The notes under the pieces were generated by a model. That model made no database searches. It was given only the letters and a program-made list of their open reading frames with translations, and was not told the origin of the DNA. The translations under genes and the position numbers were made by a program. A stretch of 64,000 nucleotides of DNA from Haliotis rubra (taxonomy: Eukaryota), in NCBI RefSeq assembly GCF_003918875.1, contig NW_025766847.1, positions 496,001 through 560,000 on the forward strand, written 5' to 3'. How positions within the stretch are numbered: the stretch's first letter is position 1; each line of letters opens with the position of its first letter. Shown here in pieces: positions 3,317 through 55,781 of this stretch.

Positions 3317-3548
3317 CTGTAACAACATTTTAAATAGCTGACGTCACGCCAATCAAGCAGTCTCCTGTGCGGCGCTGTGAATGACGCAGTACTACGAGAA
3401 TTGAGTTTCAGTGGCAGGATTAGACGTAATAATCCCTGTTAATCCATGTCATTCTCATCTGTGGGAGAACTGAGCTAACTGGCACTACTCTTCCGGACTA
3501 CTCCATGCCTCAGTGTCATGCAGGCAGGTATATAGAAGCAGAATGTCT
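3317..3548 (+). promoter_or_regulatory. Family promoter cassette, copy 1 (CTGTAACAACAT, CRE TGACGTCA 3339, CCAAT 3349, GGATTA-N7-TAATCC 3417-3435, GACTACTCCATGCCTCAGTGTCA, TATATAG 3529)
   Basis: The core blocks recur in order upstream of the other exon-1-bearing copies; the CRE is specific to this copy. Confidence 0.65.
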
Positions 3549-3622
3549 GGTCGGTGCAATGTACGTCCACCTCCATCGTCGTTTCAAGTTGTACGTTCAT
3601 TCTGCCATTTAACTAAGAAACC

Positions 3623-4274
3623 ATGTCAACACCCGCCTGTGCTGACCCGATCTGCTCCCTGTCTGCCACTAACGTGGCGTCTGCTACTGCCTTATGGAAG
3701 GACGACCCAGTGTCTGCATCCTTCCAACTCTTCAGTCTTATCGAAATGAAGGATAGATTCCTCAAGCAAGTCCAGGCCATAGGTATGTACATTTGTTTTT
3801 GTGAGTTTGTCATTAACGGGATATAATTACGTGATTTTTCTCATTCACTATTACATCATATTCTGCAAAATTGGTTTTATAAGTCATTATTTTATTCGTT
3901 ACTGCACAATCCGTCAAAATATATATAAATTGGCAGACTAAAACACTAAAAAGCATCTGTTTTTTATTTCAGATGCCTACATCCTGGAACTGTCCGAGAA
4001 GATCGTGAGAGATGCAGACAATGGCGGCCATGTTGGACATGGGTTACTTCTGCTCAACAGGAAGTGTGTAGCTGAAGGTGTCCGTCAGGTGTACCTACGA
4101 CTGGCCACACACAAGTGGAGACAAGTCAGGCAGTGCAACAACTTCATCAGACAAAACTACGAGAACCAGGACCATCTTTCAGCAGCTGATGTGGATGAGT
4201 CACATGACCACGAAGTCACCCAGATTGCTCGTGGACTTAGTATGGAGTGTTGTGAGTTCCAGCGGTCATGCTAA
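3623..4274 (+). CDS. Unrecognised two-exon gene family, copy 1 (exons 3623-3782, 3973-4274; 153 aa, MSTPAC...[40 protein letters not shown]...[15 protein letters not shown]...CCEFQRSC)
   Basis: ACCATG start, AG|GTATGT donor, TTTCAG acceptor, phase-1 intron of 190 nt, open to TAA. TATA at 3529. Same structure in the paralogs. Confidence 0.85.
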
Positions 4275-5403
4275 TTGGATGAAACAATTCACAAACTGTC
4301 ATTATTGTGTAGATCCTGTCTCCACTGACGACATCTTGCTTATTGTTGTTATTGTTAAATATAAAGTGCTGTCATGACTACATGTATTCTGTGAATGGGA
4401 GTTCTATATGTGAAAATAAAATTGTCATTCTCAGTCTTGTGTTAAGGTTACAGAACAACTGCGTTTCATCTCCAAAATAAATACCTCATGGGAAATGTAT
4501 TAAGCGTTGAAATTAATTTCAATCAGATGAGTCATCTTCCCGAGCCAAGCCTATTTCTTCCTCGACTATTCGCTAAAAATATATGCGGGGATATAGGACT
4601 ATTAGTAAACGTTGTACAAAATCAATCAATTATGGTTCCTTAAATTTAAACAAATATTTTCGAAGTTCAATCAACTCGCTCACTTACTTTATAGAATGAT
4701 TTGGTTATATTCTGATTCCTGATTGAGCGTTTCCAAAGAAAAGTAATCTGAAATATCATGGTTGAAAACTAGACTACGATATAGTCTTGTGTACACTATT
4801 GGCTTTGGAAACTCAAGACCAGCTGACATCATTGGGCCATACGGGAGTTGTGTATTCTACCTTTATAGCAGTGTATGGTAGAAACATGCATATAGCAACG
4901 CTACCTACCATGCTTCGTATTTCGGCTAGCTCAAATATCCAGCTGTATGTTTAAAACGCCCGGGGTAATCTTCCTGTCAACACAGCAATTTAAAACATTA
5001 TTTTGACATGTGTCATTTTCTGGATTACACCAGTAACACTATTCCGGTGTAAGGAGAAACAGATCAACAGCAGATGTGAACAGATACTACCCATTGGCGA
5101 AGCATACTACTGGTATAAATGTTATATAACCTAAAGTGTCAGATCTTGTCAAATCCAGCAACTCACATATCAGGGCATTTAAATGTGTCTGAGTTACTAT
5201 AAGTTATAAATTCTTTGTCCACCACCACCCTGTACTAGCACGTACTGCGACATTTATACTTAGCGTGGCCGTTGTGAGGATTGATTTACGCTCTTCAAGA
5301 TAGTCAGTTAGTTCAGATAAACAAACTCTGACTGGATCCCAACGCCTAAAATATGCTCTTGGTCCCTCCTTAAGTCACGTGATAGTGAAGGGATAACTCA
5401 AAC

Positions 5404-7938
5404 TTAAAGGTCACACATAAACCCTAGGGGTACAAATACATAAATCACTAACTGGCATCGTTATAAATGAAACCCCGTCATTGAAACTACTCATTTCGAC
5501 CTTTAATTGGCTTAAATCGACCTTTTTGACAACAGTGCACAATTCTCACCCGCGAACAGAAATTTCAACCAATCAGAGCGGCGCGCCTCTGTGACGTCAT
5601 ATGAGGAATAGCTTTGAAAGCCGATGCAGAATTCATCTACATTTTAGGGGGTAAATTATCGTGTTTACAGGCTTGTATAAACCTGAAATCGTGACAATTG
5701 TTGTTGAAAATGAAAGCTATATGTTCTCACAATCTACTGGCATTTAATTTTGTCTCCTGCTTTGCCTAGTTTCCGAGTTACAACTTGTTTTCATAGACGC
5801 TTCTGTCACAATTGATTGGTGTCGTTAAGCCCTATTTGTATAATGACTGATCCAAATTGATCCCATTTCTGTGTTTTTACCTCGATGTTTAATCATGTCA
5901 TGTAAAAAATCTGTTTGTATTCTCAAAACAGTGTCGGCCCATAAGTTTTCACATACAATACAGCAATTAATACTCCTTGTTGTAACCCGTGTTAGGTGGT
6001 ATAAACCTACGCGTTATTTGTCATCATTCACTTGATGGTCAGTAAATGAATTTATAACAGGTATAATTAGTGGTAATAATACACTTAGATTACCCGACAA
6101 AGGTTCCCATTTGGCATTTCTTGTGTCTGGAGTAAATATTCAACATTATAAACATCGATCAAAGGATTAACCGATAACACGCTGATTGATTAATTACTTT
6201 TATCTTACACAGCGGAATTGTCAAAGGTAGTGTTTATGTATGTAGATTTACTAATCTATACTGAATACACTCTGCCGTGTCGGTGTCTGCGTAAAACAAG
6301 GTCCTTCTTTCAAAGGATTAACCGGCAATACATTGATTGATTGCCCATTATTGGCTTACTAAATTACTGTTTTTAATGAAAGGCGGACATTATGCAATTA
6401 GTTGCCAGGTGTGCTATCTTGGGTGACCAATGAGACTATACACCAATACCTGAAAAAGATTTATCACTTTTTCGTATATTAAACTGTTAAAAGACACATC
6501 ATTTGGAATAGTTTTGTGGATATTGATAAACAAGGTAATGGCCTGATATTGTTCCTATAACTTTAATCTGTTTTAATTTTAATATTTGCATTTTGTTTTT
6601 ATTCATTTGTCGTAGCATTCAACAGAATCATTGTTTTCGCCGTGAAGTGTAATAGGACAGACAACATACACTAGAGTGTGTGTGTGCGAATTATGATTCA
6701 CATTGACAAACTATAAAATGTCTAGATATTACAGTTCTGTTATAAATTCACTATAAGTATCAGCAGATCGTCAGCTTTTTATTTAGTTTCAAAATGCATA
6801 AAAGTATGATAATAAACTAATTAGGTTTATAAGACCAAATATAAAGACGCATATTGACTAGTATCTACATACTGGTGAGTGGACATTAACCATGGGAATG
6901 TAGCAAGAAATTTATCGCGCAGTATTGTGACTTCGACCCCCACCTCGCTTCCGTGGAAGAAATCGTTATGTTATAAGTTGTGTCATGCAAAATCCGTTTG
7001 GTTATGATTCCAATACATATTTAACAACGAGTAGAAAGTAGTCTTGATTTTTAACTTGATGAAAACAAACTATAATCTCATTAATTCTAACAGATTTTTT
7101 ATTTTTAAAATGGCGGCGCCCTGTCGGGAACATCAGCCAGTCTGGAGGATAAATGCTATTTAGGTTTGTTTTCACCGAGTTACAAAATCAAAACTACTTT
7201 CTACTGGTAGTAAAATATGTATTTTATTGATGGCCAATAGGATTTTGCATGACATAGCGTATATCATAACAATTTCTCTCGTGGCAGCGAGGTGGGTGTC
7301 AATATAATACTACTTACAATATTATTGTTACTTCGACCACAACCTCACTTCCGAGGAAGAAATCGTTATGTTACAAGTTGTGTCATAGAAAATCTTTATG
7401 GTCATCAATCATATGCATATTTTACTACAACTAGTAAGTAGTTTTGATTCTTTAACTTCCGTGAAGCGATCTGAACACAAGTAAGATATCGTTTCAGGCT
7501 TCCACAACGCTCGCTTCGCACTCACAAAACATAACCCATTTAGCACGAACTGCGGGGTCCTGTGGAAATCTGTGCATGGGGACACCATCGCCCGACCCCT
7601 AGGAGCAATTGACGACAAAGCAACGATTCGGCATGTCGTCGTTGATGTCGAGAAATCATCAAAATGATGAGCGTGCTACACATTTTCTATACAACTAACT
7701 GAAAATCGTTCCTCATATGACGTCACTGCAGTGCTCTGGCGACAGAGTTACGTAACCTGTCTGTGGTTTCGTATGCGGGCGAGAGGAAGCAGGCGACTTT
7801 TGGCCACTTTTAATCGCTCGGTATTAATTAACCACAAGTTTTTAAAGAATAAATTTGGTGTTCCGCATAAGACTAACCACAAATCTTTCATATGTAATGG
7901 TTAAAGAGTAACAAAAACAAAGTTTAGTGGTTCTTTAA
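5404..7938 (+). mobile_element. Non-autonomous Kolobok-like DNA transposon
   Basis: TTAA at both ends (TTAA|AGGTCAC...GTGGTTCT|TTAA), short imperfect TIR, a second copy inverted at 40413-43391, internal ~130-nt inverted repeats at 6939-7300. Confidence 0.7.
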
Positions 7939-9507: not shown

Positions 9508-10240
9508 CTAGCATGATCGCTGGAACGCACAACACTCCATACTAAGTCCTCGAGCAATCTTCGTCACCTCGTGGACATGTGACTCATCCACATCAGATGC
9601 TGAAAGATAGTCCTGGTTCTCGTAGTTTTGTCTGATGAAGTTGTAGCACTGCCTGACTTGTCTCCTCTTGTTTGTGGCCAGTCGTAGGTACACCTGACGG
9701 ACACCTTCAGCTGCACACTTCCTGTTGAGCAGAAGTAACCCATGTCCAATATGGCCGCCATTGTCTGCATCTCTCACGATCTTCTCGGACAGTTCCAGTA
9801 TGTAGGTATCTGAAATGAAACAGGAGAATATAAGTACTTGTACTGGTACATCAAAATAATACCCCACACTATACTACAACTTAATACAGTGATTCATATA
9901 CATGGGCAATATTTTAGAAGGAATTACTTCGCGCTCACGAAATATAGACGTTATTGGCCATAAAATGTGTCAATATTATACTCGCAACTTCTAAAATGCC
10001 ACTCAAAGATATTGTATGACGAAATTTAACCGGACAATTTGATTCAGAAAGAATTACCCCAGAATAAAACATGTACATACCTATTACCCGGACTTGTTCC
10101 AGGAATCTATCCCGCATTTCAATCAGACTGAAGAGTTGGAAGGATGCAGACAGAGGGTCTTCCTTCACCTGGACAGAAGATGGCGGCAGTTTAGTGGCAG
10201 CCGGTGAACAGATCTGGTCAGCACTGGTGGAGGTTGCCAT
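9508..10240 (-). CDS. Unrecognised gene family, copy 2 (exons 10240-10081, 9809-9508; 153 aa)
   Basis: Same phase-1 intron position (271-nt intron), intact frame to TAG, upstream cassette at 10327-10550, AATAAA downstream. Confidence 0.85.
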
Positions 10241-10326
10241 GGTTTCAAGTTAATTGCAATGATGTGTTTAAAAGAAGCACGGAGGACTGTTAGATATCCT
10301 TAGATGCGATATGAGTGGTGTCCATC

Positions 10327-10550
10327 AGACATTCTGCTTCTTTATACCTGCCTGTATGACACTGAGGCATGGAGTAGTCTGTGGGAGGAGAGGCAAGCTG
10401 TGTTATCCCATAGATGAGATTGGCAAGGATTATCCTGGTCAACCGCGCCTCACTGACCTAATCTCATCGTCCCCTCTCACTGAGAGTGCCGGTCTGGAAA
10501 GTGTTTGATTGGCAGGTGGATTATGGAGGTGTATAACATGTTGTTACAGC
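10327..10550 (-). promoter_or_regulatory. Family promoter cassette, copy 2
   Basis: Reverse complement contains CTGTAACAACATG, GAGATTAGGTCA, GATAATCC and GACTACTCCATGCCTCAGTGTCA...GGCAGGTATAAAGAAGCAGAATGTC. Confidence 0.65.
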
Positions 10551-11291
10551 AATACAGCAATGTTCAGTCACCGCTGGGTCGTCACTGATTGCTTTGATTG
10601 GAAAAGGACCACCTCAGTTATATTATAAGAGATGGTGTCATTGTGTATGTAGTGATGACTGATTGATTATTTGGTCGTTATCAAAGCGATTAGTGAAGCT
10701 TCTTATCATGTTACGTGTTTAATATAACCTCCTATCAACCTGGATAAACTATCTTATCATACCCCCAAACCATTGATTATATTGTTGATTTTGTCCGACA
10801 GACATTATATGCCTACAGTACAAGCTCCACCAGCAGACAACCTCGTGACCTCAGTATCACTGGTTATAAACTTTCTTGTTGTTGTTGTTAGGACACGTAT
10901 CAGTGATAGAATGTAGAATTTGTGATTTGTTAATTAAAAAAAAGAATGGCATGCAATTGACTTGTATATAGGCGCTTTCACATGCACATCATTTGGTTCG
11001 ACATTCTTTCAATAAGTAGATTTGGTTCTCATCTTGACTCACTCTGTTTGCATAAATCAACATCACGCATTATTGCAAGAAATTGAATCACGAGTGGTGT
11101 AAAATGTCAACAGTGATTACACTAATCAGTAATAGTGTGATTTGTTCATAAAACAAGCAAAATCAGGAAATCTAGTAACGGCATCCATTAATGCATTCAC
11201 CAATCATATTGACTTTGGTGTTACAACACACACATGCACACACACATAGAAATAAACAATCGGTGATTACAAAGGTGTCATCACTGCATTA

Positions 11292-11510
11292 CTGTAACAA
11301 CATGTCAATCACTAAGGTTCCTGCTCGACTCTTCCAATGAGACTGTGAGATTAGGTCACTGTGAGACTAGATCAGCCAGGATAATCCTCTACAGTCGCAT
11401 TAACTGAGAAAGCGGACTCCCCAATATACCTCATGTCCCGTTATGTGGAGTAGCTTGATACTACTCCATGCCTCAGTGCCACGCCGGCAGGTATAAAGAA
11501 GCAGAATGTC
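11292..11510 (+). promoter_or_regulatory. Family promoter cassette, copy 3
   Basis: Same blocks; TATAAAG at 11492. Confidence 0.65.
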
Positions 11511-11584
11511 GGAAAGATTCTTTATCTTAACTTGCAAGCAATCACCGAGTCTGGTTTAAACCTCGTTAAAGTTAACTTGAAAAT

Positions 11585-12499
11585 ATGGCAACCTCCACAT
11601 CTGCTGACCAGATCTGTTCACAGACTGCTTCAAAATTGTCGTCTGCTGCTGCATCATGTAACAACGACCCCGTATCTGCCTCCTTTCAACTCTTCAGTCT
11701 CATAGAAATGCAGGATAGCTACCTCGAACAAGCCCAGGCCATAGGTATGTACAGGAGTCAATCTGAAGTGATTTGTTCGCTTCCGTTCATCACTGTATGC
11801 AGAAATACTACTGCCAACAAAATAAGCTCAATAACTAGGTGACCGTCCAACGCGTATGAATTACTGTCTCATCTATAATGTACATGTACTTTGAAAAATA
11901 ATTTGGACCATAAAAACTTATAAACTTCTGTCTTGCTTCAGATACCTACATCCTGGAACTGTCCGAGAAGAATATGAATCACTGTATTAAGTTTAGTATA
12001 GTGTGGGTATTATTTTGATGTACCAGTTCATGTACTTATATTCTCCTGTTTCATTTCAGATACCTACATCCTGGAACTGTCCGAGAAGATCGTGAGAGAT
12101 GCAGCCAATGGCGGCCATGTTGGACATGGGTTACTTCTGCTCAACAGGAAGTGTGTAGCTGAAGGTGTCCGTCAGGTGTACCTACGACTGGCCACACACA
12201 AGTGGAAACAAGTCAGGCAGTGCTACAACTTCATCAGACAAAACTTCGAAAACCAGGACCATCTTTCAGCAGCTGATCTGGACGAGTCACATGACCACGA
12301 AGTCACCCAGATTGCTCATGTGGACTTAGTCTGGAAATCCCTTCAAGAGGATCCTGTAGAAGACAAATGGAGTGTTGTGCGTTCCAGTGCAACAACTTGA
12401 TCATGACTAGTTTCAGAGCTGAAGAGTCACATGAACGATGACACCCAGATTGCTCGTGGACTTAGTATGGAGTGTTGTGCGTTCCAGCGATCATGCTAG
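11585..12499 (+). CDS. Unrecognised gene family, copy 3, mosaic or garbled (exon 1 11585-11744; acceptors before 11942 and 12060; altered end at 12400, normal-type end repeated at about 12444-12499)
   Basis: Exon 1 is intact. The exon 2 start is duplicated, and the first acceptor leads to an early stop. The C-terminal region is interrupted by extra sequence. Confidence 0.6.
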
Positions 12500-12796
12500 T
12501 TTCAGAGAAGACAGAAAATGACTTGACGTTGAAGATATATGTCTGGACACTTATGGACATCTAGTGCTTTATGTAAATATTGTCATAACACTTGATGGTA
12601 TGGCCAATGCTACCAATTTTGTATTTATTTTGTAAATAAACATCTATATACTGAGTCTTTTCAGTTCAGCTGTTTCTGTTTTTAGAAGAAGAAGAGTTTA
12701 ATTTTGGACTTGAACAAATGTGTTCTTCGTCCCCAAAACACATGGTGTACAGGCCTGTAAAGGACAAAGGATATATTTACAGTCAAGTTATGGAGG

Positions 12797-13410
12797 CTGG
12801 ACAATGTATTGTGTTTGAGTTCTTACGTCAATAGAGAGTTTAATATATTTAGCTAAGTTTCGCATGGCAGATTTATTGGAATGTCTAAACAGTGACATAA
12901 ACTTAAAACACTTGGTTTCTAACCCAATAGAAGCTTTTAATATATAACTTTCTAAACTGTAAATATTGCCAGTGTCCCCCCCCAATTTTTTTATTGGAGA
13001 GCGGGTGGGGTGGGGGTGGGGGCTGGGGTGGGATTGACAACAAAATTGGCATGGTATATTTAGGACAAATGAAGATAAAACTGCTCATCTTCAACAGTGT
13101 GTTGTGTTTGAGTGCTTACGTCAATAGAGAGTTTAATATATTTAGCTAAGTTTCGCAAGGCAGATTTATTGGAATGTCTAAACAGTGACATAAACTTAAA
13201 AACACTTGGTTTCTAACCCAATAAAAGCTTTTAATATAGAAATTTCTAAACTGTAAATATACTCATGCCAGTAATGGTTGTCACCCCTTCAATTTTTTTA
13301 TTGAGAGCGGGAGGGCGTGGAGGTGTGGGCTGGGGGTGGGGAGGGGTGACAACAATTATTGGCATGAGTATATTTAGGACAAATGAAGATAAAATGATAC
13401 TCATCTTCAA
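12797..13410 (+). repeat. Tandem ~300-nt duplication, each unit with a G-run tract (G-quadruplex potential at 13003-13031)
   Basis: About 12810-13094 recurs at about 13103-13411; GGGTGGGGTGGGGGTGGGGGCTGGGGTGGG. Confidence 0.75.
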
Positions 13411-13418
13411 CAAAGATT

Positions 13419-13660
13419 TTATACCCTGGCTATTGCAATAATCACAAATACAATCTTCCCTTGGAATATTACTGTATCTACCAATTTCGCAGATGTTCGC
13501 ATTTGCGTGATTAATTTCTTATCACTAGCATTTCTAACTAGATCCAAATATAGTTCAAAACCAAAATTTTCTTTTAAAGTTTTGTAAAGAAATAGTTTAC
13601 CATTTGACTCTCTAAGTAAGATCTCCATTTCTGAATATAGATATCAATGAGACGTTGCTT
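13419..13660 (-). mobile_element. Decayed non-LTR retrotransposon ORF2 3' end
   Basis: KLFLYKTLKENFGFELYL...KLITQMRTSA resembles LINE ORF2 C-termini. Confidence 0.45.
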
Positions 13661-14875
13661 AACAACTTTACAAAAAATTATCAACATTTTCAATTGAAAA
13701 TTTAGCACACAATTATATTACTTGATGGCTTTCTTAATGTGTAAGCTGCGGAATCAGCTTTTGATTGTACCTTTTAAGAACTGAGGATTGTATGATTCGG
13801 TTGGTAAGTCGCGAATTGATTGGCCTGCTTGTTAGAATCATGGTAAATTTTCTGTTAATATTGTCCCACCTAACCTGACACACCACAGGAGGCTCCAATT
13901 TGAGCTATCCTTTCATGCAGTTATTTGAAGATAAACCGATTTGAAAGTATTTGTAGGACCTGGATACAGGCTAGATATTATATTGTCAAGATGAGTAATT
14001 CAGATAAATAAAAGTGGTTCTTGTAGTTCTAGCTGTGCAACATTTGCGACAAGCCGAATCACACCTCACCGTTTTAAACACGCTTAAAGGGAACTTTGTG
14101 GACATGTATAGGTGTATCTTATATTATGACAAACGGACATGTTAACAGATAAACAATCGATTGCTTTGTCATTCTTGGTATAAGCAGTTATCTGTGTTTA
14201 ACCTTTGGCTCGTAAAAGTAGACAAACATTGAGACAGTTCTATTTACACGTTTCGGTATGGAGTTTCTTAAACCGCCGTGAAGCAAGACAGAATAATGAA
14301 CATGTTAGCTATACAGAACTACACATGGTAGGTCAAGAATTAACAATTCTAGCAATTGTCATACACACGGGCAATACTGTCGTTCTTGGGACAAAGCAAA
14401 TCTCTGAGATATCTGTACTTAAACCACAATTGTGATGACCACCAGAAATTCAATACAATGGGTTACGTCCTTACACCCTTCCTCACACAATAACGACAAA
14501 TAGACCAGTCCAGAAACCAGTCCAAAACATATACAGTAGACTCAGTAGACTGAATAAACACATTTATCAAACTACTTTCTGGGCTTATGAAGCTGTACTG
14601 TCAAAACGAAAGGAATAAAGTCCTTAATATAGAATTTGATACAACTCTGCTCATGCAAGCAGTACTGTCAAAACAAAAAGTAAAAAGCCTTACATATAGA
14701 GTTAGATACTGTTTCTCAGATAAACTGTACAATGGCAGAGCTTCAGAGAGTAGAGTATATTACTTCTCAGATCGGAGGTCAGCAGGTTCCCTTTGGAGAC
14801 CGTCGCCAAACTGCCACACACTGGAAATTTATCATTTCTAACTTCTAAGGTCGCCTTACCACAGTAGGTGACTAT

Positions 14876-15127
14876 GTGAGAAATGCATCCCCACGCAGTC
14901 ACCCCAAGATTGAAGATGCTGAGAGTCTCCGCTTCGTGAGCAAGTTAAGAAACCGTTCCAGAGAAAAAGTTACCCCCATGCAGCAGATTTACAATGAGGA
15001 GCGGAACGCCCTTGACGACAATGATGCAGCACGTACTTTGAATTACCTGCCGTTCAAGCCATCGAAGAAGTCTTCCCAGACTGTGAGGTTAGAGGCTGCG
15101 TATTTCACTACAGCCAATGTATGCTGA
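14876..15127 (+). mobile_element. Possible MULE/FLYWCH-type transposase remnant
   Basis: SHP...FVSKLRNRSRE...PMQQIYNEE resembles the segment after the FLYWCH finger; frame is broken. Confidence 0.3.
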
Positions 15128-15580
15128 CAAAAGGGCAAACCCTTTGATTTGTTACAGACTACACGAGAGATGCTGGAGTGCAAGCTATAGTTCGTCGTGC
15201 AGCATGTCTTCCTCTCTTGCCCACTGCACAGACTTAAGAACCACTTAGAGAAATTGACTGTCGGCTGCACAGACTTAAGAACCACTTGTTAGAAGGTTGC
15301 CAAACCAAGCTACAGTTCCTATTTATTAGGTGAATAATGATAAACATATAAAAGGTTAAAAAATGTAGTTGATAAAAAGAGAACTGATTTGACATTTGTG
15401 GAGGGGGCAATATCAACAATATATTCACTGTTATACTTACCAACAAAACAAACAATCATCTTGTTTTTGCTGCCATTATATAGATTACAACACTACCGCA
15501 AACTTAATTATGTAGGATGATTAATAACGTAACGTTAACCATTTCCAAACAAACACATCTCATCGTACATTATTGCATTG

Positions 15581-15797
15581 CTGTAACAACATGTTATACA
15601 CCTCCATAATCCACCTGCCAATCCAACAGTTTCCGGTCCGGCACTCTCAGTGAGAGGGGACGATGAGATTAGGTCAAAGAGGCAGGATTAACCAAGATAA
15701 TCCTTGCCAATCTCATTTATGGGAGAACTTGCCACTACTCTGACAGACTACTCCATGCCTCAGTGTCACACAGGCAGGTATAAAGAAGCAGAATATC
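15581..15797 (+). promoter_or_regulatory. Family promoter cassette, copy 4
   Basis: Same blocks; GGATTA-N7-TAATCC 15685-15703; TATAAAG 15779; TCATT Inr-like motif about 30 nt downstream. Confidence 0.65.
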
Positions 15798-15885
15798 TCA
15801 TGTGTGCCGTTCATTATCTCAACTCAAGCAAGCTGCGAGTCAAAAAGTCACCTGTTGAAATTAAAGCCGAAACAAATTTGAAACC

Positions 15886-16554
15886 ATGGCAACTTCCATC
15901 TCTCCTGGCCAGATCTGTTCACCATCTAGCACTAAACTGTCGTCTGCTCCCTCATGGAAGGACGACCCAGTGTCTGCCTCTTTTCAACTTTTCAGCCTTA
16001 TCGAAATGCAGGATAGATTCCTGGAACAAGTCCAGGCCATAGGTATGTTCCTATATTAATCTAAAGTAACTCTCTAAAATCAAATTCTTTGGTTAAATAG
16101 GTCAAAATTGTGTAACCAACCATGATAATAGCATAAGATATATACAAAAGTGATGCATGGGTACAGGTGATTTGACTAACTGATTGGTCTGTTAGACAAA
16201 TCGCTGTCTTCACTTATACACCAAGTACTAATAAATATCTGTTGTATTTCAGATGCCTACATCCTGGAACTGTCCGAGAAGATCGTGAGAGATGCAGCCA
16301 ATGGCGGCCATGTTGGACATGGGTTACTTCTGCTCAACAGGAAGTGTGTAGCTGAAGGTGTCCGTCAGGTGTACCTACGACTGGCCACACACAAGTGGAA
16401 ACAAGTCAGGCAGTGCTACAACTTGATCAGACAAAACTTCGAGAACCAGGACCATCTTTCAGCAGCTGATCTGGACGAGTCACATGACCATGAAGTCACC
16501 CAGATTGCTCGTGGACTTAGTATGGAGTGTTGTGCGTTCCAGCGATCATGCTAA
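15886..16554 (+). CDS. Unrecognised gene family, copy 4 (exons 15886-16042, 16253-16554; 152 aa)
   Basis: ACCATGG start, conserved splice sites, intact frame, TATA at 15779. Confidence 0.85.
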
Positions 16555-17985: not shown

Positions 17986-18089
17986 ATTAGAGATTTAGAG
18001 AAATGCTCTCTACTTTGAAAAATAAGGAACACCTTTTGGTAACAATATGTTTTATATAACATGATTAAAACAAGGGTAAATGTTGACCA

Positions 18090-19170: not shown

Positions 19171-20040
19171 TATGCAACTACCCATACGTTGACCACGTGG
19201 GTAATAAGTTCCTTTATTACCCACGTGGTCAACGTATGGGTAGTTGCATATTATTCTCGTACGTCACACGAGTGTCGTATAAAGTTCCTTTATTACCCAC
19301 GTGGTCAACGTATGGGTAGTTGCATATTAATCTCGTACGTCACACGAGTGTCGTATCGCGTTGACCTGTGTCGTAACGACTTGACCTGAGATTCTAACGA
19401 TCTGATTGGATAACCGATGACCTCACAGTTAGGTCACATTCTGACGTAACTATTTTTTTCATTCTTAACAAACACGTGAATTCATTCATTCTACAACTTA
19501 AATGCATTGTGGGAATGTAAACATTGCGAACGTTGCCGTGTCGCTGTTTAATTGTGAGTCGAACTGAGACATTATATCTGTCGAAAAACATAAACGCAAT
19601 GTTTCCACCAGTGATGTTAGCCGAATGAAGCAACTGGAAACCAAGAAACGAGGTGCAACGGAGTAGTCTACTGTAGGAGGCTGTACGAGGCGATGACAAC
19701 TGACATGCATCGTGACGTCGGTTACCATGGCAGTGACGTCATTAGTGTGACGTCATGCAAATATTGTACTACAGTACAAAACTCTTCCGCAACCTCTTTA
19801 TGAAACCGGTTTCGGTTTGAAACCAAAAACATAACAAAAATACGCTATTTTGTCAATTTAAATGCATGTAAGACGTGGGTAATAAATAAAATACACACTC
19901 GGTCTCATTACATACGAATTATACGAAACTCGTGACCTTCCTATGTTATCTGACCTCGCTTTCGCTCGGTCAGATACCATAGGAAGGACACTCGTTTCGT
20001 ATAATTCGTATGTAATGAGACCTCGTGTAGTATTCTCTAT
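19171..20040. mobile_element. Non-coding element with terminal hairpins (tentatively Crypton-like, non-autonomous)
   Basis: Perfect 37-bp hairpin 19171-19250, subterminal IR TTTATTACCCACGT / ACGTGGGTAATAAA, ~65-bp hairpin 19895-20028, ends TATTCTCTAT; CpG-rich relative to flanks. Family assignment is from memory only. Confidence 0.5.
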
Positions 20041-20240
20041 ATATTAATCTGCAGTAACTCTCTAAAATCAAATTCTTTGGTTAAATAGGTCAGAATTGTG
20101 TAACCAACCATGATAATAGCATAAGATATATACAAAAGTGATGCATGGGTACAGGCTATATGGCTAACTGATTGGTCTGTTAGACAAATCGCTGTCTTCA
20201 CTTATACACCAAGTACTAATAAATATCTGTTGTATTTCAG

Positions 20241-20542
20241 ATGCCTACATCCTGGAACTGTCCGAGAAGATCGTGAGAGATGCAGCCAATGGCGGCCATG
20301 TTGGACATGGGTTACTTCTGCTCAACAGGAAGTGTGTAGCTGAAGGTGTCCGTCAGGTGTACATACGACTGGCCACACACAAGTGGAAACAAGTCAGGCA
20401 GTGCTACAACTTGATCAGACAAAACTTCGAAAACCAGGACCATCTTTCAGCAGCTGATCTGGACGAGTCACATGACCATGAAGTCACCCAGATTGCTCGT
20501 GGACTTAGTATGGAGTGTTGTGCGTTCCAGCGATCATGCTAA
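20241..20542 (+). pseudogene. Unrecognised gene family, copy 5: exon 2 and most of the intron only; promoter and exon 1 replaced by a hairpin-bearing insertion
   Basis: 20041-21372 is nearly identical to about 16053-17390. Upstream lies the 19171-20040 element instead of exon 1. Confidence 0.75.
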
Positions 20543-22813: not shown

Positions 22814-22901
22814 CTCCCTCCCTCCCTCAGCTCAGCTCAGCTCAGCTCTGCTTCTCTCCACTCCGCTCCACTCACTGCACTCCACTCTACTCCACTCCAC
22901 T
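22814..22901 (+). repeat. Compound microsatellite (CCCT)n(CAGCT)n(CTCCA)n
   Basis: Seen directly. Confidence 0.8.
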
Positions 22902-26130: not shown

Positions 26131-26161
26131 CCCGCAGAGTTCTACTAGAGGATTGAAATGC

Positions 26162-29123: not shown

Positions 29124-29340
29124 CTGTAACAACATGTTATACACCTCCATAATCCACCTGCCAATCCAACAGTTTCCGGTCCGGCACTCTCAGTGAGAGG
29201 GGACGATGAGATTAGGTCAAAGAGGCAGGATTAACCAAGATAATCCTTGCCAATCTCATTTATGGGAGAACTTGCCACTACTCTGACAGACTACTCCATG
29301 CCTCAGTGTCACACAGGCAGGTATAAAGAAGCAGAATATC
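29124..29340 (+). promoter_or_regulatory. Family promoter cassette, copy 6
   Basis: Same blocks; TATAAAG 29322. Confidence 0.65.
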
Positions 29341-29434
29341 TCATGTGTGCCGTTCATTATCTCAACTCAAGCAAGCTGCGAGTCACAAAGTCACCTGTGT
29401 CTGTTGAAATTATAGCCGAAACAAATTTGAAACC

Positions 29435-30103
29435 ATGGCAACTTCCATCTCTCCTGGCCAGATCTGTTCACCATCTAGCACTAAACTGTCGTCTGCTCCC
29501 TCATGGAAGGACGACCCAGTGTCTGCCTCTTTTCAACTTTTCAGCCTTATCGAAATGCAGGATAGATTCCTAGAACAAGTCCAGGCCATAGGTATGTTCC
29601 TATAATAATCTCAAGTAACTCTCTAAAATCGAATTCTTTGGTTAAATAGGTCAAAATTGTGTAACAAACCATGATAATAGCATAAGATATATACAGAAAT
29701 GATGCATGGGTACAGGCTATATGGCTAACTGATTGGTCTGTTAGACAAATCGCCGTCTTCACTTATACACCAAGTACTAATAAATCTCTGTTGTATTTCA
29801 GATGCCTACATCCTGGAACTGTCCGAGAAGATCGTGAGACATGCAGCCAATGGCGGCCATGTTGGACATGGGTTACTTCTGCTCAACAGGAAGTGTGTAG
29901 CTGAAGGTGTCCGTCAGGTGTACCTACGGCTGGCCACACACAAGTGGAAACAAGTCAGGCAGTGCTACAACTTCATCAGACAAAACTTCGAGAACCAGGA
30001 CCATCTTTCAGCAGCTGATCTGGACGAGTCACATGACCACGAAGTCACCCAGATTGCTCGTGGACTTAGTATGGAGTGTTGTGCGTTCCAGCGATCATGC
30101 TAA
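29435..30103 (+). CDS. Unrecognised gene family, copy 6 (exons 29435-29591, 29802-30103; 152 aa)
   Basis: Near-identical to copy 4, intact frame, TATA at 29322. Confidence 0.85.
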
Positions 30104-31639: not shown

Positions 31640-34600
31640 TCAGTCTGTCTTCACTTTGTCCTGAAACAATGGGAGAGCAAGTCGGGCCCACTGGTCGTGC
31701 CATCTCACTGACTGAAACGACTTCACATTGTTTCGCAGTTTCTTCAATTCTGACTGGTTGTCTGGAAATCCCTTCAGGAGATCCTGTGAAGACAAGCATT
31801 GATGTTTTAGTTTTCAAACATTTGATACCTGTAATTCTATTCTTGACACCATGCTTGAACACTGAAGAAGCAGGTTTATAGTGAGAATGACTGTTCTTTT
31901 ACACATGTGAGATATGAAGAAAGATCTTAATGGGACAAATAACTGATCTCTTATAATGATTTGCACACTCACTTGTATCTACAGTTTAGTTAAGGGGTAT
32001 TCTGTTCTACAGCCAACAGGTGACAACAATGGAATGGTGAACAGAGAATGTGACTGACAGTTGCCAATGTTGAACTCTACCCATGCATCGTTATTTCAGA
32101 ATACACTTAGTTATTGTTTGTCTTGCAAAAGTTTTCTGTCAAAATATGCAGCCAAACTTTATTTTTTCAATAAGCTAAAAACATGATGATAACTAGCTTT
32201 ATAATCAGGACAATCCAGCTTTTGAACTGTATTCCTTTCAAGTTTGAAATATTAATCTGCTGTAATATATTCACATTATAATGAAGTATAGTTACCTGTA
32301 ATTGGACTGACAACTGCTGACTGTCTTGGAACACCAGACCATTCTCTCCATGCTTGACCAACTCTGGCAGACTGGCAACACAAAACCACATGACAGTGCC
32401 ACATTAAACAAATTGTTTAAAATATCAAGTCATGCCATGAGTTTATGAAGAGTTATATTTCATCAGGAAGAAGGTCAGGCTGGATTCCTGTTTACACAAT
32501 ATTTCAGCAATACCATTGGGTCCATCACGTCACCTTGGACGACGAACATTGGTTGCTGGGGGCTTATTCTAACCCAGAACACCCATCAGGACACGCATAG
32601 GCTGCTCGAAGTCTTTTCTAACCAGGAATGCCCATAAGTAGGTTTCTGGGGTCCCTTACTAACCAGGAATGCCAATCAATAGATTCCTGGGTCCTATGCT
32701 AACCATCATTTGAAACCCTAGAAGGTCATTTGAAACACTAGAATGTCATTTGAAACATAAGAATGTTATTTATTGAAGTTGTTTCATGTTTGCCAGTGCT
32801 GAGTTTGGAAATGAATGCAATTAACTTACTCATTAGTGAGTGAGTGAGATCCCTTAAGTTGACTCATGACAAGCACAGGTTACTTTGGACCAAATCTACA
32901 CAACCAATCAGTTGTGTGTATTCACTGACCATTTAAAATCCACTGCACAAACTGGAAGGCCACATCCAAACATGTCCACTACTTTCATTGGTAGATCCAG
33001 CCCACTGGAGGACTTGTGAAGACACACGCCTATGTCAGCTGAGCCTGTGGGAGAAAGGAGAAACCTGCACACTATTGACGTATTTATACACACTTCTGTC
33101 TCCTTCGGTAGCAGACTCAACCCTTGTTACATACAAGAGGCACCTGCAGAGCCATGAGTTTTTATAGCTCAATTTGATTTTTCTGAGCAAACTTCAAATA
33201 ATCCATTAACAGGTTTCTCTCCAGAATGATAATTCAATGGATTGATAAATAAAGGGCTAGAGGGCTAGTTCCTGAGTGAAGAACTGACTAATTTAGATAA
33301 CTTAACCTGTGCTAATTGCATCCAGATACACAAAACCCTCCCAGCAAACATTCATGATGAAGTCATATGCACTGATCATGCTGATCTTCTGTTGTTGTTG
33401 TTGTTTGCTTTATTTAACATCGCACCCACAACAAAACAAAAACAACAAAAATACAACAACAGAGTATTAAGGGAAATTTGAATGGGAGGCCGAATTAAAA
33501 AGGTAAAAAATATGAAATAGGTACAGAGTAATAGAGATTTGGAATTTAATATATATGTAGTGTAATAAATGGTGTTTGTTATTTTTTTGGTTTTACACCC
33601 AACCCATGTTTAAAAACATATTTATTTAGTGAATAATGATAAACATATAAAAGGTTAAAAAATGAAGTTGATAAAAAGAGAGAATATTCGAAGTGTACAT
33701 ATATATTTGTCATCATAAAGTCTGTTTAATGCAACCCAACTTCTTCTGATTAGTTTAACAACATCTCACCCAATCTCAAACTATTAACACAATTTAGTTA
33801 AGCTCTGTCACCTGTGTAACTAATACTGAATAGTTAAAGAACATCTCACACAATCTCAAACTATTAACACAATTTAGTTAAGCTCTGTCACCTGTGTAAC
33901 TAATGCTGATTAGTTAAAAACATCTCACCCAATCTCAAACTATTAACACAATTTAGTTAAGCTCTGTCACCTGTGTAACTAATGCTGATTAGTTTAACAA
34001 CATCTCACCCAATCTCAAGCCAATAACACAATATAGTTAAGCTCTGTCAGCTCTTCTAAAATACCAATCAAACAGATAAGCTCTGTCACCTGTGTAACTA
34101 ATGCTGATTAGTTTAACAACATCTCACCCAATCTCAAGCCAATAACACAGGTTATTAGTCTGTCACCTGTGTAATCAATACTACTGTCAACAATCAGACA
34201 AAGCAAACAATGTGTTAGCCATGAGAGTTGAACAGCTGTGAGGGAAAAGTACCAAAGTAGTATTGTTTGTGCCAGTGTGATTTGTAAAGAAACATTTCAA
34301 TACATGATGTTCATTATCCAAACATCCTGCAACAGTATACTTTATCACTTGACATTTTACAATTAGTGTAGGCTAACATAAGAATATGTTCATTCATGGT
34401 CAGTAAAAACAGCACATGTAGTCAAATTTGACCTGTCTGTATTTATTACCTGCAATAATCCAGTTGTATATTCCCTGCTGCTTACAGCCAATGAATTTCT
34501 AACTATTTATAGATCACCCTAATATCAATGAGCTATACCAATACTAGCTATGAAACACCACTAGCTATTTCACCACCACTTTACAGCCAATGAAACACCA

Positions 34601-37600
34601 CTAACTATTTCACCACCACTTTACAGTCAATGAAACACCACTAACTATTTCACCACCACTTTACAGCCAATGATTTCAAACAATCAGTCAACACTAACTT
34701 TTCCTGTGCCAATGAAACATCATGGCTATTTCACCACCACTTTACAGCCAATGAAACACCACTAGCTATTTGCCATACAGTCAATGAAACTCACTAAATT
34801 TCACCACCACTTTACAAATGAAACACCACTTATTTTGTGACTAACTATTTCACCACCACTTTACAGTCAATGAAACACCATCTATCACCAATCTACCACC
34901 TACATCCAGCCACAGCCATGACTAGTTCCAGCCCAGAAACACCACTAACTATTTCACCACCACCAATCAGCAACATGTTTTTCCTCAGTTAGAACTGTGA
35001 TTAGCACATGATAATCCAATCAGTTGATTAGCCATGATAATCCTTGTTAATCCCATCTATTGGAGAACTCAGCTTGCCACTAATCCAACAGACTTCTCCA
35101 TGTCTCAGTGTCACACAGACAAGTATATAGAAGCAGAATGTCTGGTTCAAACCAGTCACATTCAAGCTTTGGATGTGAATTGTCAACTTGTCCTCCCAAA
35201 TCCATCCATTCTAACTCTGACACCATGGCAACATCCAGTTCCACCACCTGTGATCAGACCTGCTCCCTGGATAACTTGTCTTCTGCTGCTGCCGTATGGA
35301 AGGACGACCCAGTGTCTGCCTCCTTCCAACTTTTCAGTCTTATTGAAATGCAGGATAGATTCCTCAAACAAGTCCAGGTCATAGGTATGTATACATCTTG
35401 TTCTATAATCATTCATACCAACTAAGTGGTCCTTATAACCATATTTACTGTATTACCCAATATTCTCTTTTTATCCAAACATTCAATAAGCATAAAACTG
35501 TTGAAAAACGTGTACTCATTTCAGATCCCACTAAAGTACTAAAATATATTTCTGATTTCAGATGCCTACATCCTGGAACTGTCCGAGAAGATCGTGAGAG
35601 ATGCAGCTAATGGTGGCCATGTTGGACATGGGTTACTTCTGCTCAACAGGAAGTGTGTAGCTGAAGGTGTCCGTCAGGTGTACCTACGACTGGCCACACA
35701 CAAGTGGAGACAAGTCAGGCAGTGCTACAACTTCATCAGAAAAAACTACGAGAACCAGGACCATCTTTCAGCAGCTGATCTGGACGAGTCACATGACCAC
35801 GAAGTCACCCAGATTGCTCGTGGACTTAGTATGGAGTGTTGTTTCGTTCCAGCGATCATGCTAACAGTATCTGACTGACTGAGTTGGTGAAAACTACATC
35901 AAGCTGAAGCTGCATCTTTATTCAGCAGTATATAATAGTGCTTATTGTAAATACTGTACCATGCTGTTAAGTATTTTGTTTTTGTAAATAAACATCACAA
36001 TGTTCAGAGCTTCCTCTGTTTGTTTGCTCACAATGATCATTTATGTCACCTATAGCTTGTACACCTGCTCCAGATACTACTCACCAAGCAGGAGTGGATA
36101 GTCCTCAGATGTTAGCCATGGCAGACAGAACTTGACATGAGAGAAAGTCATCTCAGATATCTTCTTCATATAAAAGTCTTTCTGAGGACCTTTGCCTGTG
36201 GATAGACAACCTACTTTTGTAGGTACTTATTTCTGAAGTGCAAAGTAAAGAGTTCTGATCTTCAGAGATTCTGTATACTGGTAAAATTATTCAAAATGCT
36301 AAAACATATCTGTATGACCGCCAAATCGCCATAGTTACCAAACAGCGTAACATTTGGTGAGATACTGATAATGATAATCACTTTACAGTAGCCTGAAAAG
36401 AATGTCCTAACACTATTTTTCTCTTCATCAAATATATTAAAATTTGAAAAAGATATTCAGAGATGCCAACCCTGAATCTAATGAAAGTGGAGTCATGCCT
36501 AAATTTACAAAATTGTATACGGTAAAAAGAAAAAGGTTTTCATTCTCTTTAAGTAGTTATTTATAGAGAAAAAGGGGAGCAGATTTTGCATGTGGTTGGC
36601 ATCTCTGTATGATATTGTGCAGCCCGGCTGAGATTACTCTTTAGAACAGCAGGTTACAACAGACCCCTAATACCCACTGTGTAGTGTGACTTTAGTTGGA
36701 GAATTTACACTTTGAAATGCAAGCAGCCTCTACACACATGATGACCACTGTTTTCATGTCATCAGCTACACAGGTGAACCAAAGCCCGAAAACATGAGTC
36801 TTCTATAGGACCTACTCACCTGTAATCACACAGATCAGGTCAGGTAAGGACGAGGATTTTGTAGATACTGCCGCCTCATATTCTGCAAACGGGAATAGAA
36901 ATTCACTTTTTTCACTTGACAAAAATCCATTCACAACACATGATCCTTGTTCACACACGGTAAATAAAGCTGCTGTTGCATTTTATCATTGTAGGATATT
37001 TATATAGCGCATATATCCACCCCAACTCGTACATGATCATTTTCTCAAGTTCACACTTTCTTGATTCCCACACAGCTTGATTATTTGAAATGTTTATAGG
37101 ATTACTACATCTAATCTAATCATCTCTATGTTTCAACTACAGCATCAATAGTCATATTATAACAAACAATAAAATAGGTAGGTAGTATCGACGTCAGCAA
37201 CTGAGGCGAGCCAATCATCTCACTTTTACCGTTGTTACTTGGAAAACAGATTCACTAACACAGCCTAAATCTGCTTTACCCATTTTTCAATTCATAGTGT
37301 TAAAAACAGTAACATTAGAATAGTTCAAAACTAGTAACTTGTAGCTGATGTGTATACAGTAATCAGCTTGCACCATTGTTATAAGGTGTACGAGTTTCTA
37401 GTTAATTAGACTAATGGTATGTTACTGCAAAGCTTCCGATCTTGCCACAATGGCAGAGTGGTCAGCCGAATATTGTAAATTGAGTTGACAGTTGAAAGGT
37501 TAGCAAGTGTGGGTGTTTAGACGTCATATTCTTTTTCAATTTGTGTGAGTCTTCAAGGAATTTAAGGCTCTTAAGGGGAATTTTATGCATAGTTTGGATA

Positions 37601-47250: not shown

Positions 47251-55781
<8,531 letters not shown>

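What the first reader, a model, noticed from the sequence alone, without database searches (positions are those of the whole stretch)
3317..35143. Shared modular upstream cassette better conserved than introns, 5' UTRs or the protein N-terminus
Seen upstream of the six exon-1-bearing copies, in the same order. (1) CTGTAACAACAT, degenerate in copy 7. (2) GAGATTAGGTCA in copies 2, 3, 4 and 6. (3) An everted pair GGATTA-N7-TAATCC: exact in copies 1, 4, 6; TGATTA in copy 7; AGATCA in copy 3; TAATCC retained in all. (4) A ~50-nt block GACTACTCCATGCCTCAGTGTCAnnnnGGCAGGTATAWAGAAGCAGAAT. Established: TAATCC is the K50 homeodomain site (Otx/Pitx/Gsc), AGGTCA a nuclear-receptor half-site, TATAWA a TATA box. 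Inference: the paralogs act as a phylogenetic footprint of one co-regulation module. The CTACTCCATGCCTCAG part matches no motif I know.
Basis: partly seen in the sequence, partly recalled or inferred. Interest (0 to 1): 0.72.

Follow-up and report, generated by a model that had tools for sequence, protein, structure and literature searches.

The report
Conserved promoter of abalone orphan genes
Six neighbouring copies of a small abalone gene of unknown function keep the same ~220-base promoter, including a nearly unchanged 52-base stretch around the TATA box, and four abalone species share it. It is a real, selected control region, but of an ordinary kind.

Summary
The genome is Haliotis rubra. 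The genes are a two-exon, ~152-aa, mollusc-only family with no known domain.

The same cassette precedes every copy found in H. asinina (5), H. rufescens (2) and H. cracherodii (3). Among paralogs, the 52-nt core around the TATA box is 90% identical. Exon 1 is 78% identical; introns, 5'UTRs and flanks are at the random-alignment level of 52-55%. Exon 1 groups copies by orthology, so the paralogs are older than the rubra/asinina split. The core keeps ortholog-specific states, which points to purifying selection rather than gene conversion.

The core block occurs nowhere else in the 1.38-Gb genome.

- Only the core beats exon 1. The rest of the cassette is patchy (61%).
- AGGTCA is present in only 8 of 16 promoters.
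- The GGATTA-N7-TAATCC pair is not a cooperative P3 site.
- A conserved CCAAT box and an ETS-like TTCC site were missed.

The transcription start and the bound factors remain untested, because no RNA covered the genes. The scan has reported the same kind of conserved promoter for other abalone gene families on other DNA.

The parts
3317..3547 (+). Promoter cassette of copy 1 (motif 1 through the core block). The core is 3496-3547 and the TATA box starts near 3529.
   Evidence: nhmmer with the cassette profile: E = 2.8e-59.
10328..10549 (-). Promoter cassette of copy 2, head-to-head with copy 3. The core is 10328-10379.
   Evidence: nhmmer E = 7.7e-73.
11292..11510 (+). Promoter cassette of copy 3. 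The core is 11459-11510.
   Evidence: nhmmer E = 1.7e-40.
15581..15797 (+). Promoter cassette of copy 4. The core is 15746-15797.
   Evidence: nhmmer E = 9e-72.
29124..29340 (+). Promoter cassette of copy 6, 100% identical to that of copy 4 (recent duplicate). The core is 29289-29340.
34934..35142 (+). Promoter cassette of copy 7, the most diverged. The core is 35091-35142.
   Evidence: nhmmer E = 2.9e-46. It shares derived states with its H. asinina ortholog asi5 (A4).
3548..4274 (+). Copy 1 gene: inferred 5'UTR 3548-3622, exon 1 3623-3782, phase-1 intron (GT..AG), exon 2 3973-4274.
9508..10327 (-). Copy 2 gene: exon 1 10240-10081, exon 2 9809-9508.
11511..12499 (+). Copy 3 gene: exon 1 11585-11744, exon 2 from 12060. 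Exon 2 carries a 138-nt partial internal duplication (about 12304-12441) with a frameshift and an early stop.
   Evidence: (a contig skips 12303-12442).
15798..16554 (+). Copy 4 gene: exon 1 15886-16042, exon 2 16253-16554.
20240..20542 (+). Copy 5: an exon 2 alone, with an open frame and a splice acceptor but no exon 1 and no cassette. It serves as an internal control: the cassette goes with exon 1.
   Evidence: (no cassette hit nearby).
29341..30103 (+). Copy 6 gene: exon 1 29435-29591, exon 2 29802-30103.
35143..35878 (+). Copy 7 gene: ATG 35225, exon 1 to 35384, exon 2 from 35562. The C-terminus is altered: the frame changes after ..MECC and a stop follows 11 codons later.

Best explanation
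The cassette is the proximal promoter (~210 nt) plus the core promoter of a tandem cluster of small, mollusc-specific genes of unknown function in Haliotis rubra. Purifying selection has kept it since before the paralogs, and then the abalone species, diverged.

What the sequence shows. Ten conserved footprints lie in a fixed order. The spacing between them is flexible, except inside the core:
- CTGTAACA
- a CCAAT box (CCAATCA)
- an ETS-like CAGTTTCC(T/G)G
- GATTA
- CAGGATAATCCTTG, a K50-type homeodomain word
- ATGGG
- TGCCACT
- a 52-56-nt core with almost no indels, in which an invariant CTCAGTG lies a constant 15 nt (16 in two copies) before TATAWAG
- an Inr-like ATTCA about 33 nt after the start of the TATA box
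- the start-codon context AAACCATGGCAAC

What is inferred. RNA polymerase II starts about 30-35 nt after the TATA box, giving a 5'UTR of roughly 50-85 nt. The upstream words are sites for activators, plausibly NF-Y, an ETS factor and an Otx/Pitx/Gsc-type K50 homeodomain. The 30 nt just upstream of the TATA box bind a factor not yet identified. Because all copies carry the same set of sites, they should be switched on together.
For: The motifs are present and non-random.

The cassette always has the gene's orientation, including inverted copy 2. TATA-to-ATG distance is 93-113 nt in the window copies and 80-115 nt in the other copies measured. The exon-2-only copy 5 has no cassette.

The same cassette lies upstream of all 5 H. 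asinina, 2 H. rufescens and 3 H. cracherodii copies.

Paralog identity: core 0.90 and proximal part 0.61, against UTR 0.55, intron 0.53, distal flank 0.52, 3' flank 0.55 and baseline 0.50. Ortholog identity, rubra vs asinina: core 0.88 against pooled intron and flanks 0.63, Fisher p = 1.4e-18; proximal part 0.75, p = 2e-12.

Exon 1 groups copies by orthology: 84-92% between orthologs against 66-84% between paralogs. The paralogs are therefore old. The core keeps ortholog-group-specific states at columns 5, 32, 39 and 50 of A4, so it has not been homogenised since the species split.

The block is private to the cluster in the 1.38-Gb genome, so it is not a repeat or a transposon.

Exact TAATCC/GGATTA words number 1-4 per cassette, against 0.12 expected per 220 nt.
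Against: There is no transcript evidence. The four candidate RNA runs laid on 10050-16049 covered only an unrelated repeat near 13250-13376 plus one small exon-2 contig. No transcript-derived protein of the cluster type exists in the 5.8-billion-protein collection. The start site, and even expression, are therefore unproven.

Gene conversion does act in this cluster. Exon 2 is more alike within a species than between orthologs, so some of the core's similarity could predate the species split through conversion.

In ortholog alignments, 9.5% of other 52-column non-coding windows reach the core's identity.

Copies 3 and 7 have altered C-termini yet keep the cassette.

The cassette profile finds nothing upstream of the intronless paralog or of the second family array.

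No binding factor was tested.
Confidence: 0.85

Rival explanations
1. One reading: a module read by an Otx/Pitx/Gsc-type K50 homeodomain on the everted TAATCC pair, together with a nuclear receptor on AGGTCA, drives all copies. This refines the best explanation; it does not exclude it.
For: ATAATC is invariant in 16 of 16 promoters and exact TAATCC occurs in 13 of 16 at about -86 from the TATA box. The left arm GATTA is kept in 13 of 16. Cassettes hold 1-4 exact TAATCC/GGATTA words against 0.12 expected. ATAATCC is also conserved upstream of the intronless paralog in two species. K50 homeodomains prefer TAATCC (PMC13530268, PMC6004077).
Against: AGGTCA is present in only 8 of 16 promoters and absent from copies 1 and 7 and their orthologs. 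The pair is ATTA-N7-TAAT, not the cooperative TAAT-N3-ATTA P3 site, and OTX2 and PITX3 barely cooperate even on P3. A 6-mer cannot name a factor. No binding or expression data exist.
Confidence: 0.4
2. The similarity is an effect of concerted evolution. Gene conversion or recent duplication keeps copying the promoter between paralogs, with no selection on its sequence.
For: Exon 2 shows concerted evolution: rubra paralogs are 93-98% alike against 92-95% for orthologs. Copies 4 and 6 are a recent duplicate. In several cases rubra cores are closer to each other than to their asinina orthologs, for example rub2-rub4 96% against rub2-asi2 85%.
Against: Ortholog-specific states persist in the core: the rub7/asi5, rub4/asi4 and rub1/asi1 pairs each share states. 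The core is a 52-nt island flanked on both sides by sequence at or near random-alignment identity (UTR 0.55, proximal part 0.61). That is short for conversion tracts (established knowledge, not tested here). The same block is kept in four species. Ortholog divergence in the core is about a third of that in introns and flanks. The rubra-versus-asinina asymmetry fits a simple rate difference.
Confidence: 0.1
3. The block is transcribed: the start site lies upstream of it. It then acts in the RNA, as a short upstream reading frame beginning at the conserved ATG of CCATGCC, or as a small hairpin (TGCCT-N11-AGGCA).
For: An ATG is kept in 14 of 15 cores. An imperfect inverted repeat pairs in 93% of cells, with two double changes, in rub7 and asi2. 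The Gnomon model of asi4 starts its coding sequence inside motif 1.
Against: The upstream frame is broken in asi3 (in-frame TGA), in asi4 (GTG in place of ATG) and in cra2/cra4 (a +1 insertion). Covariation is not significant: 79 of 500 shuffles reach the observed score. Folding energy is unremarkable, z = -1.3. The A/T alternation at the fifth TATA position and the fixed distance to the ATG fit a TATA box. The asi4 model looks like a workaround for a lost start codon.
Confidence: 0.05
4. The cassette is part of a mobile element or repeat that happens to sit before each copy.
For: None beyond its repetition within the window.
Against: Both halves of the core occur only in this cluster in the 1.38-Gb genome. 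Near matches occur at control level. The relaxed composite pattern finds only unrelated hits.
Confidence: 0.01

Closest known systems
TATA-containing RNA polymerase II promoters with upstream CCAAT (NF-Y), ETS and homeodomain sites
   Same: A TATAWA box at a fixed place before the ATG, an Inr-like word about 33 nt after it, and upstream CCAAT, TTCC and TAATCC words within ~210 nt in the gene's orientation.
   Different: The start site is unmapped. The main CCAAT box lies 150-180 nt before the TATA box, further upstream than the usual NF-Y position (from memory). The most conserved part, 30 nt directly upstream of the TATA box, matches no motif I could name, and no motif library was available.
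K50 homeodomain target elements (Bicoid/Orthodenticle enhancers, CRX/OTX sites; PMC6004077, PMC13530268)
   Same: Several TAATCC/GGATTA words are clustered within ~100 nt, and one is almost invariant.
   Different: The arrangement is ATTA-N7-TAAT, not the cooperative P3 palindrome. No evidence of binding or of an Otx-like expression domain. Abalone factors were not examined.
snRNA-type promoters with a proximal sequence element at fixed spacing from a TATA box (from memory)
   Same: A 20-30-nt invariant element lies immediately upstream of a TATA box, with constant spacing and almost no indels across old paralogs and four species.
   Different: The genes here are spliced and protein-coding. 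There is no sequence similarity to any PSE that I know of. This is a resemblance in layout only; membership was not tested.
Conserved promoter words in other tandem abalone gene arrays noted earlier by this scan (s1-339738 LIM-homeobox array, s1-339789 ZNFX1, s1-339836)
   Same: The same genome and the same pattern: tandem paralogs keep short promoter blocks before a TATA box across four abalone species.
   Different: These are different gene families and different motifs on other DNA. I did not re-test those notes.

Membership tests
TATA-box core promoter (RNA polymerase II) | TATAWA(A/G) consensus word | tested here: met
   TATA[A/T]A is invariant in 15 of 15 non-redundant promoters from four species (A4).
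TATA-box core promoter (RNA polymerase II) | Transcription start 25-35 nt downstream of the TATA box | not testable with these tools
   The public runs laid on 10050-16049 gave no coverage of the genes, and no transcript-derived proteins were found. The only hint is a conserved ATTCA/AGTCA word about 33 nt after the TATA start.
TATA-box core promoter (RNA polymerase II) | Fixed orientation and short distance to the coding start | tested here: met
   The cassette has the gene's orientation in all 16 copies. TATA-to-ATG distance is 80-115 nt in the 12 copies measured. Copy 5, which has no exon 1, has no cassette.
K50 paired-like homeodomain site (Otx/Pitx/Gsc/Bicoid type) | TAATCC hexamer, conserved | tested here: met
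   ATAATC is present in 16 of 16 promoters and exact TAATCC in 13 of 16 at the same position.
K50 paired-like homeodomain site (Otx/Pitx/Gsc/Bicoid type) | Cooperative dimer arrangement TAAT-N3-ATTA (P3) | tested here: not met
   The pair is GGATTA-N7-TAATCC, that is, ATTA-N7-TAAT. The P3 definition is from PMC13530268.
K50 paired-like homeodomain site (Otx/Pitx/Gsc/Bicoid type) | Bound by a K50 homeodomain protein | not testable with these tools
   No binding data or motif-scoring library was available.
Nuclear-receptor response element | AGGTCA half-site conserved across the co-regulated copies | tested here: not met
   AGGTCA is present in 8 of 16 promoters. It is absent from copies 1 and 7, their orthologs, asi3, cra2 and cra4.
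Nuclear-receptor response element | A second half-site (direct or inverted repeat) or an A/T-rich 5' extension for monomeric receptors | tested here: inconclusive
   No second AGGTCA or TGACCT lies in any cassette. The 5' flank GATT resembles a monomer extension only loosely, and that comparison is from memory.
CCAAT box (NF-Y type) | CCAAT pentamer conserved, with flanks like CCAATCA | tested here: met
   The CAATCA footprint has a mean majority of 0.93 across 15 promoters. Exact CCAAT occurs at about -150 to -180 from the TATA box in 13 of 16 promoters.
Mollusc-specific orphan protein family (the genes served by the cassette) | Sequence relatives, and a shared intron position | tested here: met
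   There is no Pfam hit. Relatives are found only in Haliotis and in bivalves (Pecten, Mizuhopecten, Pinctada, Saccostrea), all annotated as uncharacterised. The phase-1 intron position is shared with the second Haliotis subfamily.

The most novel reading that the evidence does not exclude
The invariant 30 nt directly upstream of the TATA box (..ACTACTCCATGCCTCAGTGTCA..) is held at a constant 15-nt spacing from it and contains an imperfect palindrome, TGCCT-N11-AGGCA. It could be the site of an undescribed, possibly mollusc-specific, sequence-specific factor. With TBP, that factor would form a dedicated core promoter, PSE-like in layout, private to this gene family. This would explain why the element is better conserved than the coding exon 1.
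Probability: 0.3. Interest if true: 0.5.

Novelty: new member of a known kind. Interest (0 to 1): 0.33.

Why it matters
The finding gives a clean, cross-species-validated promoter of ~220 nt, with ten discrete footprints, for a non-model mollusc in which almost no cis-regulatory elements have been defined. It could serve as a compact test promoter for abalone transgenesis or reporter work. The 30-nt element next to the TATA box is a defined bait for finding its binding factor. The genes themselves are a mollusc-only family of unknown function, so the promoter is at present the best handle on when and where they act. Conserved promoters among tandem paralogs are expected, however, and this scan has found several in the same genome.

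Tried and rejected
- Transcription start mapping. One run search gave four small candidate RNA runs. Laid on 10050-16049, they covered only a common repeat at about 13250-13376 and one 163-nt exon-2 contig that lacks copy 3's 138-nt insert. Nothing can be said about start sites. Both caps are used.
- Transcript contigs through protein look-ups. All cluster-type proteins are RefSeq gene models. The only Logan contig (L045) belongs to the intronless paralog and may be genomic DNA.
- Gene identity. Pfam found nothing above cut-off. The PDB sequence search found nothing. The ESM Atlas gave no usable hit. The AlphaFold model from a 10-sequence alignment had pLDDT 47 and was all-helical. That is too poor for a fold search, so none was run.
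- Literature by LOC or XP identifiers: no papers.
- Homology of the cassette to the upstream DNA of the intronless paralog (L038/L045) and of the second family array (L048, L039). nhmmer found no hit. Only short words are shared: ATAATCC and GGTATATA in L038, and GGCAAGTATAAAG in L048.
- Other genomic targets of the block: none.
- RNA or DNA hairpin in the core: covariation and folding energy are not significant.
- Upstream reading frame: rejected, because the frame is broken in four copies.
- Joined models. Exons were searched separately by reference, and full-length queries used the intronless paralog's ORF or stored RefSeq proteins.
- Masking and refusals.

Full report
**What is in the window**

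The window is G000:C1957:496001-560000 of a 1.38-Gb, 2855-contig genome. It has no N runs. A RefSeq protein of Haliotis rubra (P0007, LOC124280894) has the same first ten residues as the N-terminus translated from copy 2, so the organism is the blacklip abalone or something extremely close to it.

tblastn with the two exon peptides of copy 1 finds seven copies of exon 2 and six of exon 1. The copies are c1 (+), c2 (-), c3, c4, c6 and c7 (+), plus c5, which has only exon 2. Each complete copy has an exon 1 of ~157-160 nt, a phase-1 GT..AG intron of 177-315 nt, and an exon 2 of ~302 nt.

**Checking the observation**

- CTGTAACAACAT with up to 1 mismatch gives 6 matches against 0.87 expected; no shuffle reached that.
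- GAGATTAGGTCA gives 5 matches against 0.28 expected.
- The 16-mer of the block gives 6 matches against 0.28 expected.
- GGATTA-N7-TAATCC with up to 2 mismatches gives 8 matches against 2.6 expected, and 5 of them lie in cassettes.

The order is the same in all six copies. The orientation follows the gene, including the inverted copy 2, which sits head-to-head with copy 3 about 740 nt away. Copies 4 and 6 are a recent duplicate, with identical cassettes and introns 94% alike, so there are five independent paralogs, not six.

**Is the cassette better conserved than its surroundings?**

I cut each copy into segments using the multiple alignment and the splice sites. I aligned every pair globally, with shuffled sequences as the baseline.

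Mean identity among the five non-redundant paralogs of the window:

| Segment | Identity |
|---|---|
| 52-nt core | 0.90 |
| Rest of the cassette (proximal part) | 0.61 |
| Whole cassette | 0.68 |
| 5'UTR | 0.55 |
| Intron | 0.53 |
| 350 nt further upstream | 0.52 |
| 3' flank | 0.55 |
| Exon 1 | 0.78 |
| Exon 1, first 81 nt | 0.70 (0.48 as protein) |
| Exon 2 | 0.82 (0.87-0.97 without copy 3) |
| Shuffled baseline | 0.50 |

It is right for the whole cassette against introns and UTRs. Against the N-terminal coding sequence, the whole cassette only ties.

**Other species**

I fetched the corresponding loci of three species.
- H. asinina (L042) has five copies, in the same + - + + + order as the window.
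- H. rufescens (L043) has two copies.
- H. cracherodii (L044) has three complete copies.

Every one of these copies carries the cassette.

Across 15 non-redundant promoters, the footprints with at least 80% majority are, in order:
1. CTGTAACA
2. CAATCA, as part of GCCAATCA
3. CAgTTTCCtG
4. CgGCaCT
5. GATTA
6. CAgGATAATCCtTG
7. ATgGG
8. TGcCaCT
10. AtTCA
11. the start context AAAcCATGGCAAC

It occurs in 8 of 16 promoters.

The spacing between footprints varies. ATAATCC-to-TATA distance is 65-111 nt and motif 1-to-TATA distance is 188-212 nt. The core itself has almost no indels. Two H. cracherodii copies have a single T inserted just before the TATA box, and one H. rufescens copy is shorter by 3 nt near the core's 5' edge.

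**Selection or conversion?**

Exon 1 groups copies by orthology. The pairs rub1-asi1, rub2-asi2, rub3-asi3 and rub7-asi5 are 90-92% identical, and rub4-asi4 is 84%. Paralogs are 66-84% identical. The five paralog lineages therefore existed before H. rubra and H. asinina split.

Exon 2 behaves differently. Paralogs within a species (93-98%) are more alike than orthologs (92-95%). Gene conversion therefore acts on exon 2.

In the core, several states are specific to an ortholog group and shared across species:
- column 5 T and column 32 A in rub7/asi5
- column 50 A in rub4/asi4/cra2/cra4
- the A/T choice in the TATA box in four of five ortholog pairs (A4)

The core has therefore not been homogenised since the species split.

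Between orthologs, the core is 88% identical against 63% for pooled introns and flanks (Fisher p = 1.4e-18). The proximal part is 75% (p = 2e-12). A caveat: 9.5% of other 52-column non-coding windows in the ortholog alignments do as well as the core. The strong signal is thus the conservation across old paralogs, not the ortholog comparison alone.

Conversion before the split cannot be excluded. But a 52-nt island between sequences at or near random identity (proximal part 0.61, UTR 0.55) is much more easily explained by purifying selection.

**Is the block used elsewhere?**

It is not.
- The 18-mer with up to 2 mismatches gives the six cluster sites plus 31 scattered hits, against 22 for the reversed-pattern control.
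- The TATA half gives the six cluster sites plus one other hit, against 0 for the control.
- A relaxed composite of the invariant positions finds the six cluster sites plus six unrelated hits, four of them one repeat.

The block is therefore neither a repeat nor a genome-wide regulatory word, and there are no 'other targets'.

**The genes**

No Pfam family matches, nor does any PDB sequence or any usable Atlas cluster. A profile search of 1.84 billion proteins finds weak relatives only in other molluscs (Pecten, Mizuhopecten, Pinctada, Saccostrea), all 'uncharacterized'. It also finds a second Haliotis subfamily (P0015/P0024). That subfamily forms arrays of at least 20 near-identical copies, with starts mostly about 2.4 kb apart, on contigs C69 and C2770.

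The AlphaFold model is all-helical but of low confidence, pLDDT 47.

The intron sits at the same codon in the second subfamily. The single intronless paralog on C2178 (L038, 60% identical over exon 2) is therefore derived.

The cassette profile does not detect the upstream regions of L038, of its ortholog L045, or of the P0024 array. These regions do share short words at comparable places. L038 and L045 have ATAATCC about 105 nt before a GGTATATAAA box. L048 has GGCAAGTATAAAG. I treat these as hints of an older common promoter layout, nothing more.

**How it most likely works**

Shown by the sequence:
- a conserved TATAWA box, 93-113 nt before the ATG in the window copies (80-115 nt in the others measured)
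- ordered upstream footprints
- strict association with exon 1

Inferred:
- a start about 30-35 nt after the TATA box, near the conserved ATTCA/AGTCA word
- activator sites upstream

From established knowledge, TAATCC is the preferred word of K50 homeodomains (PMC13530268, PMC6004077), CCAAT that of NF-Y, and GGAA (here TTCC) the ETS core.

The pair GGATTA-N7-TAATCC has the two TAAT cores pointing away from each other, 7 nt apart. Paired-like homeodomains cooperate on TAAT-N3-ATTA. Cooperation is lost with one extra base, and OTX2 and PITX3 hardly cooperate at all. I therefore read the pair as independent monomer sites.

The 30 nt between the upstream words and the TATA box are the best conserved part, and I could not assign them. 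They contain an imperfect palindrome (TGCCT-N11-AGGCA), but covariation and folding energy are not significant. Reading the conserved ATG as an upstream open frame fails in four copies.

**What could not be done**

No motif library was available, so the factor names rest on recalled consensus words. Exons were searched by reference, and full-length searches used the intronless ORF or stored RefSeq proteins.

**Verdict**

This is a real, selected, family-private promoter with a strikingly rigid core. It has the ordinary promoter architecture, with an unassigned element next to the TATA box. Earlier notes of this scan describe the same phenomenon for other abalone gene arrays on other DNA. The pattern is therefore not rare in this genome.

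Noticed in passing
window exon 2 of all copies (e.g. 3973-4274, 16253-16554) compared with L042: Exon 2 evolves in concert: paralogs within a species are 93-98% identical, more than orthologs at 92-95%. Exon 1, the intron and the flanks of the same genes follow orthology or are randomised. The gene-conversion tracts appear to be confined to exon 2.
   Followed up: partly
window 12304-12441 (copy 3, exon 2): A 138-nt partial internal duplication of the exon's 3' end, with a 2-nt frameshift, gives copy 3 a different C-terminus and an early stop. One public contig matches the form without the insert.
   Followed up: partly
window 35840-35878 (copy 7): The C-terminus of copy 7 is altered after ..MECC: the conserved xFQRSC end is lost and 11 other residues follow. 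Its H. asinina ortholog is intact.
   Followed up: no
window 20240-20542 (copy 5): An orphan exon 2 with an open frame and a good splice acceptor, but no exon 1 and no promoter cassette. The hairpin noted by another first-stage finding (19895-20028) lies just upstream.
   Followed up: no
L038 (G000:C2178:1422012-1425317), ORF 1366-1809: An intronless paralog on another contig (60% identical over exon 2), with its own TATA box and an ATAATCC word that is conserved in another abalone (L045). The intron position is ancestral, so this copy lost its intron or is a retrocopy that gained or kept a promoter.
   Followed up: partly
G000:C69:10000-52000 and G000:C2770:377000-388000 (L046-L057): A second, distantly related subfamily (158 aa, P0024) forms tandem arrays of at least 20 copies that are 95-99% identical, with starts mostly about 2.4 kb apart. 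The function is unknown. Its TATA region reads GGCAAGTATAAAG, like the cluster's core.
   Followed up: partly
window 13250-13376: A short, very common repeat, covered at high depth by many unrelated contigs in all four runs laid. It is probably a SINE or MITE fragment.
   Followed up: no
window 51167-54342: A long tandem array of a 31-nt unit, about 76 copies at 81% match. A 40-nt repeat (34550-34830) rich in CACCAC lies just upstream of copy 7's cassette.
   Followed up: no
L042 13539-13837 (H. asinina copy 4): The canonical start codon is lost. The RefSeq model instead begins its coding sequence inside motif 1 of the cassette (165-aa product), which is probably an annotation workaround.
   Followed up: no
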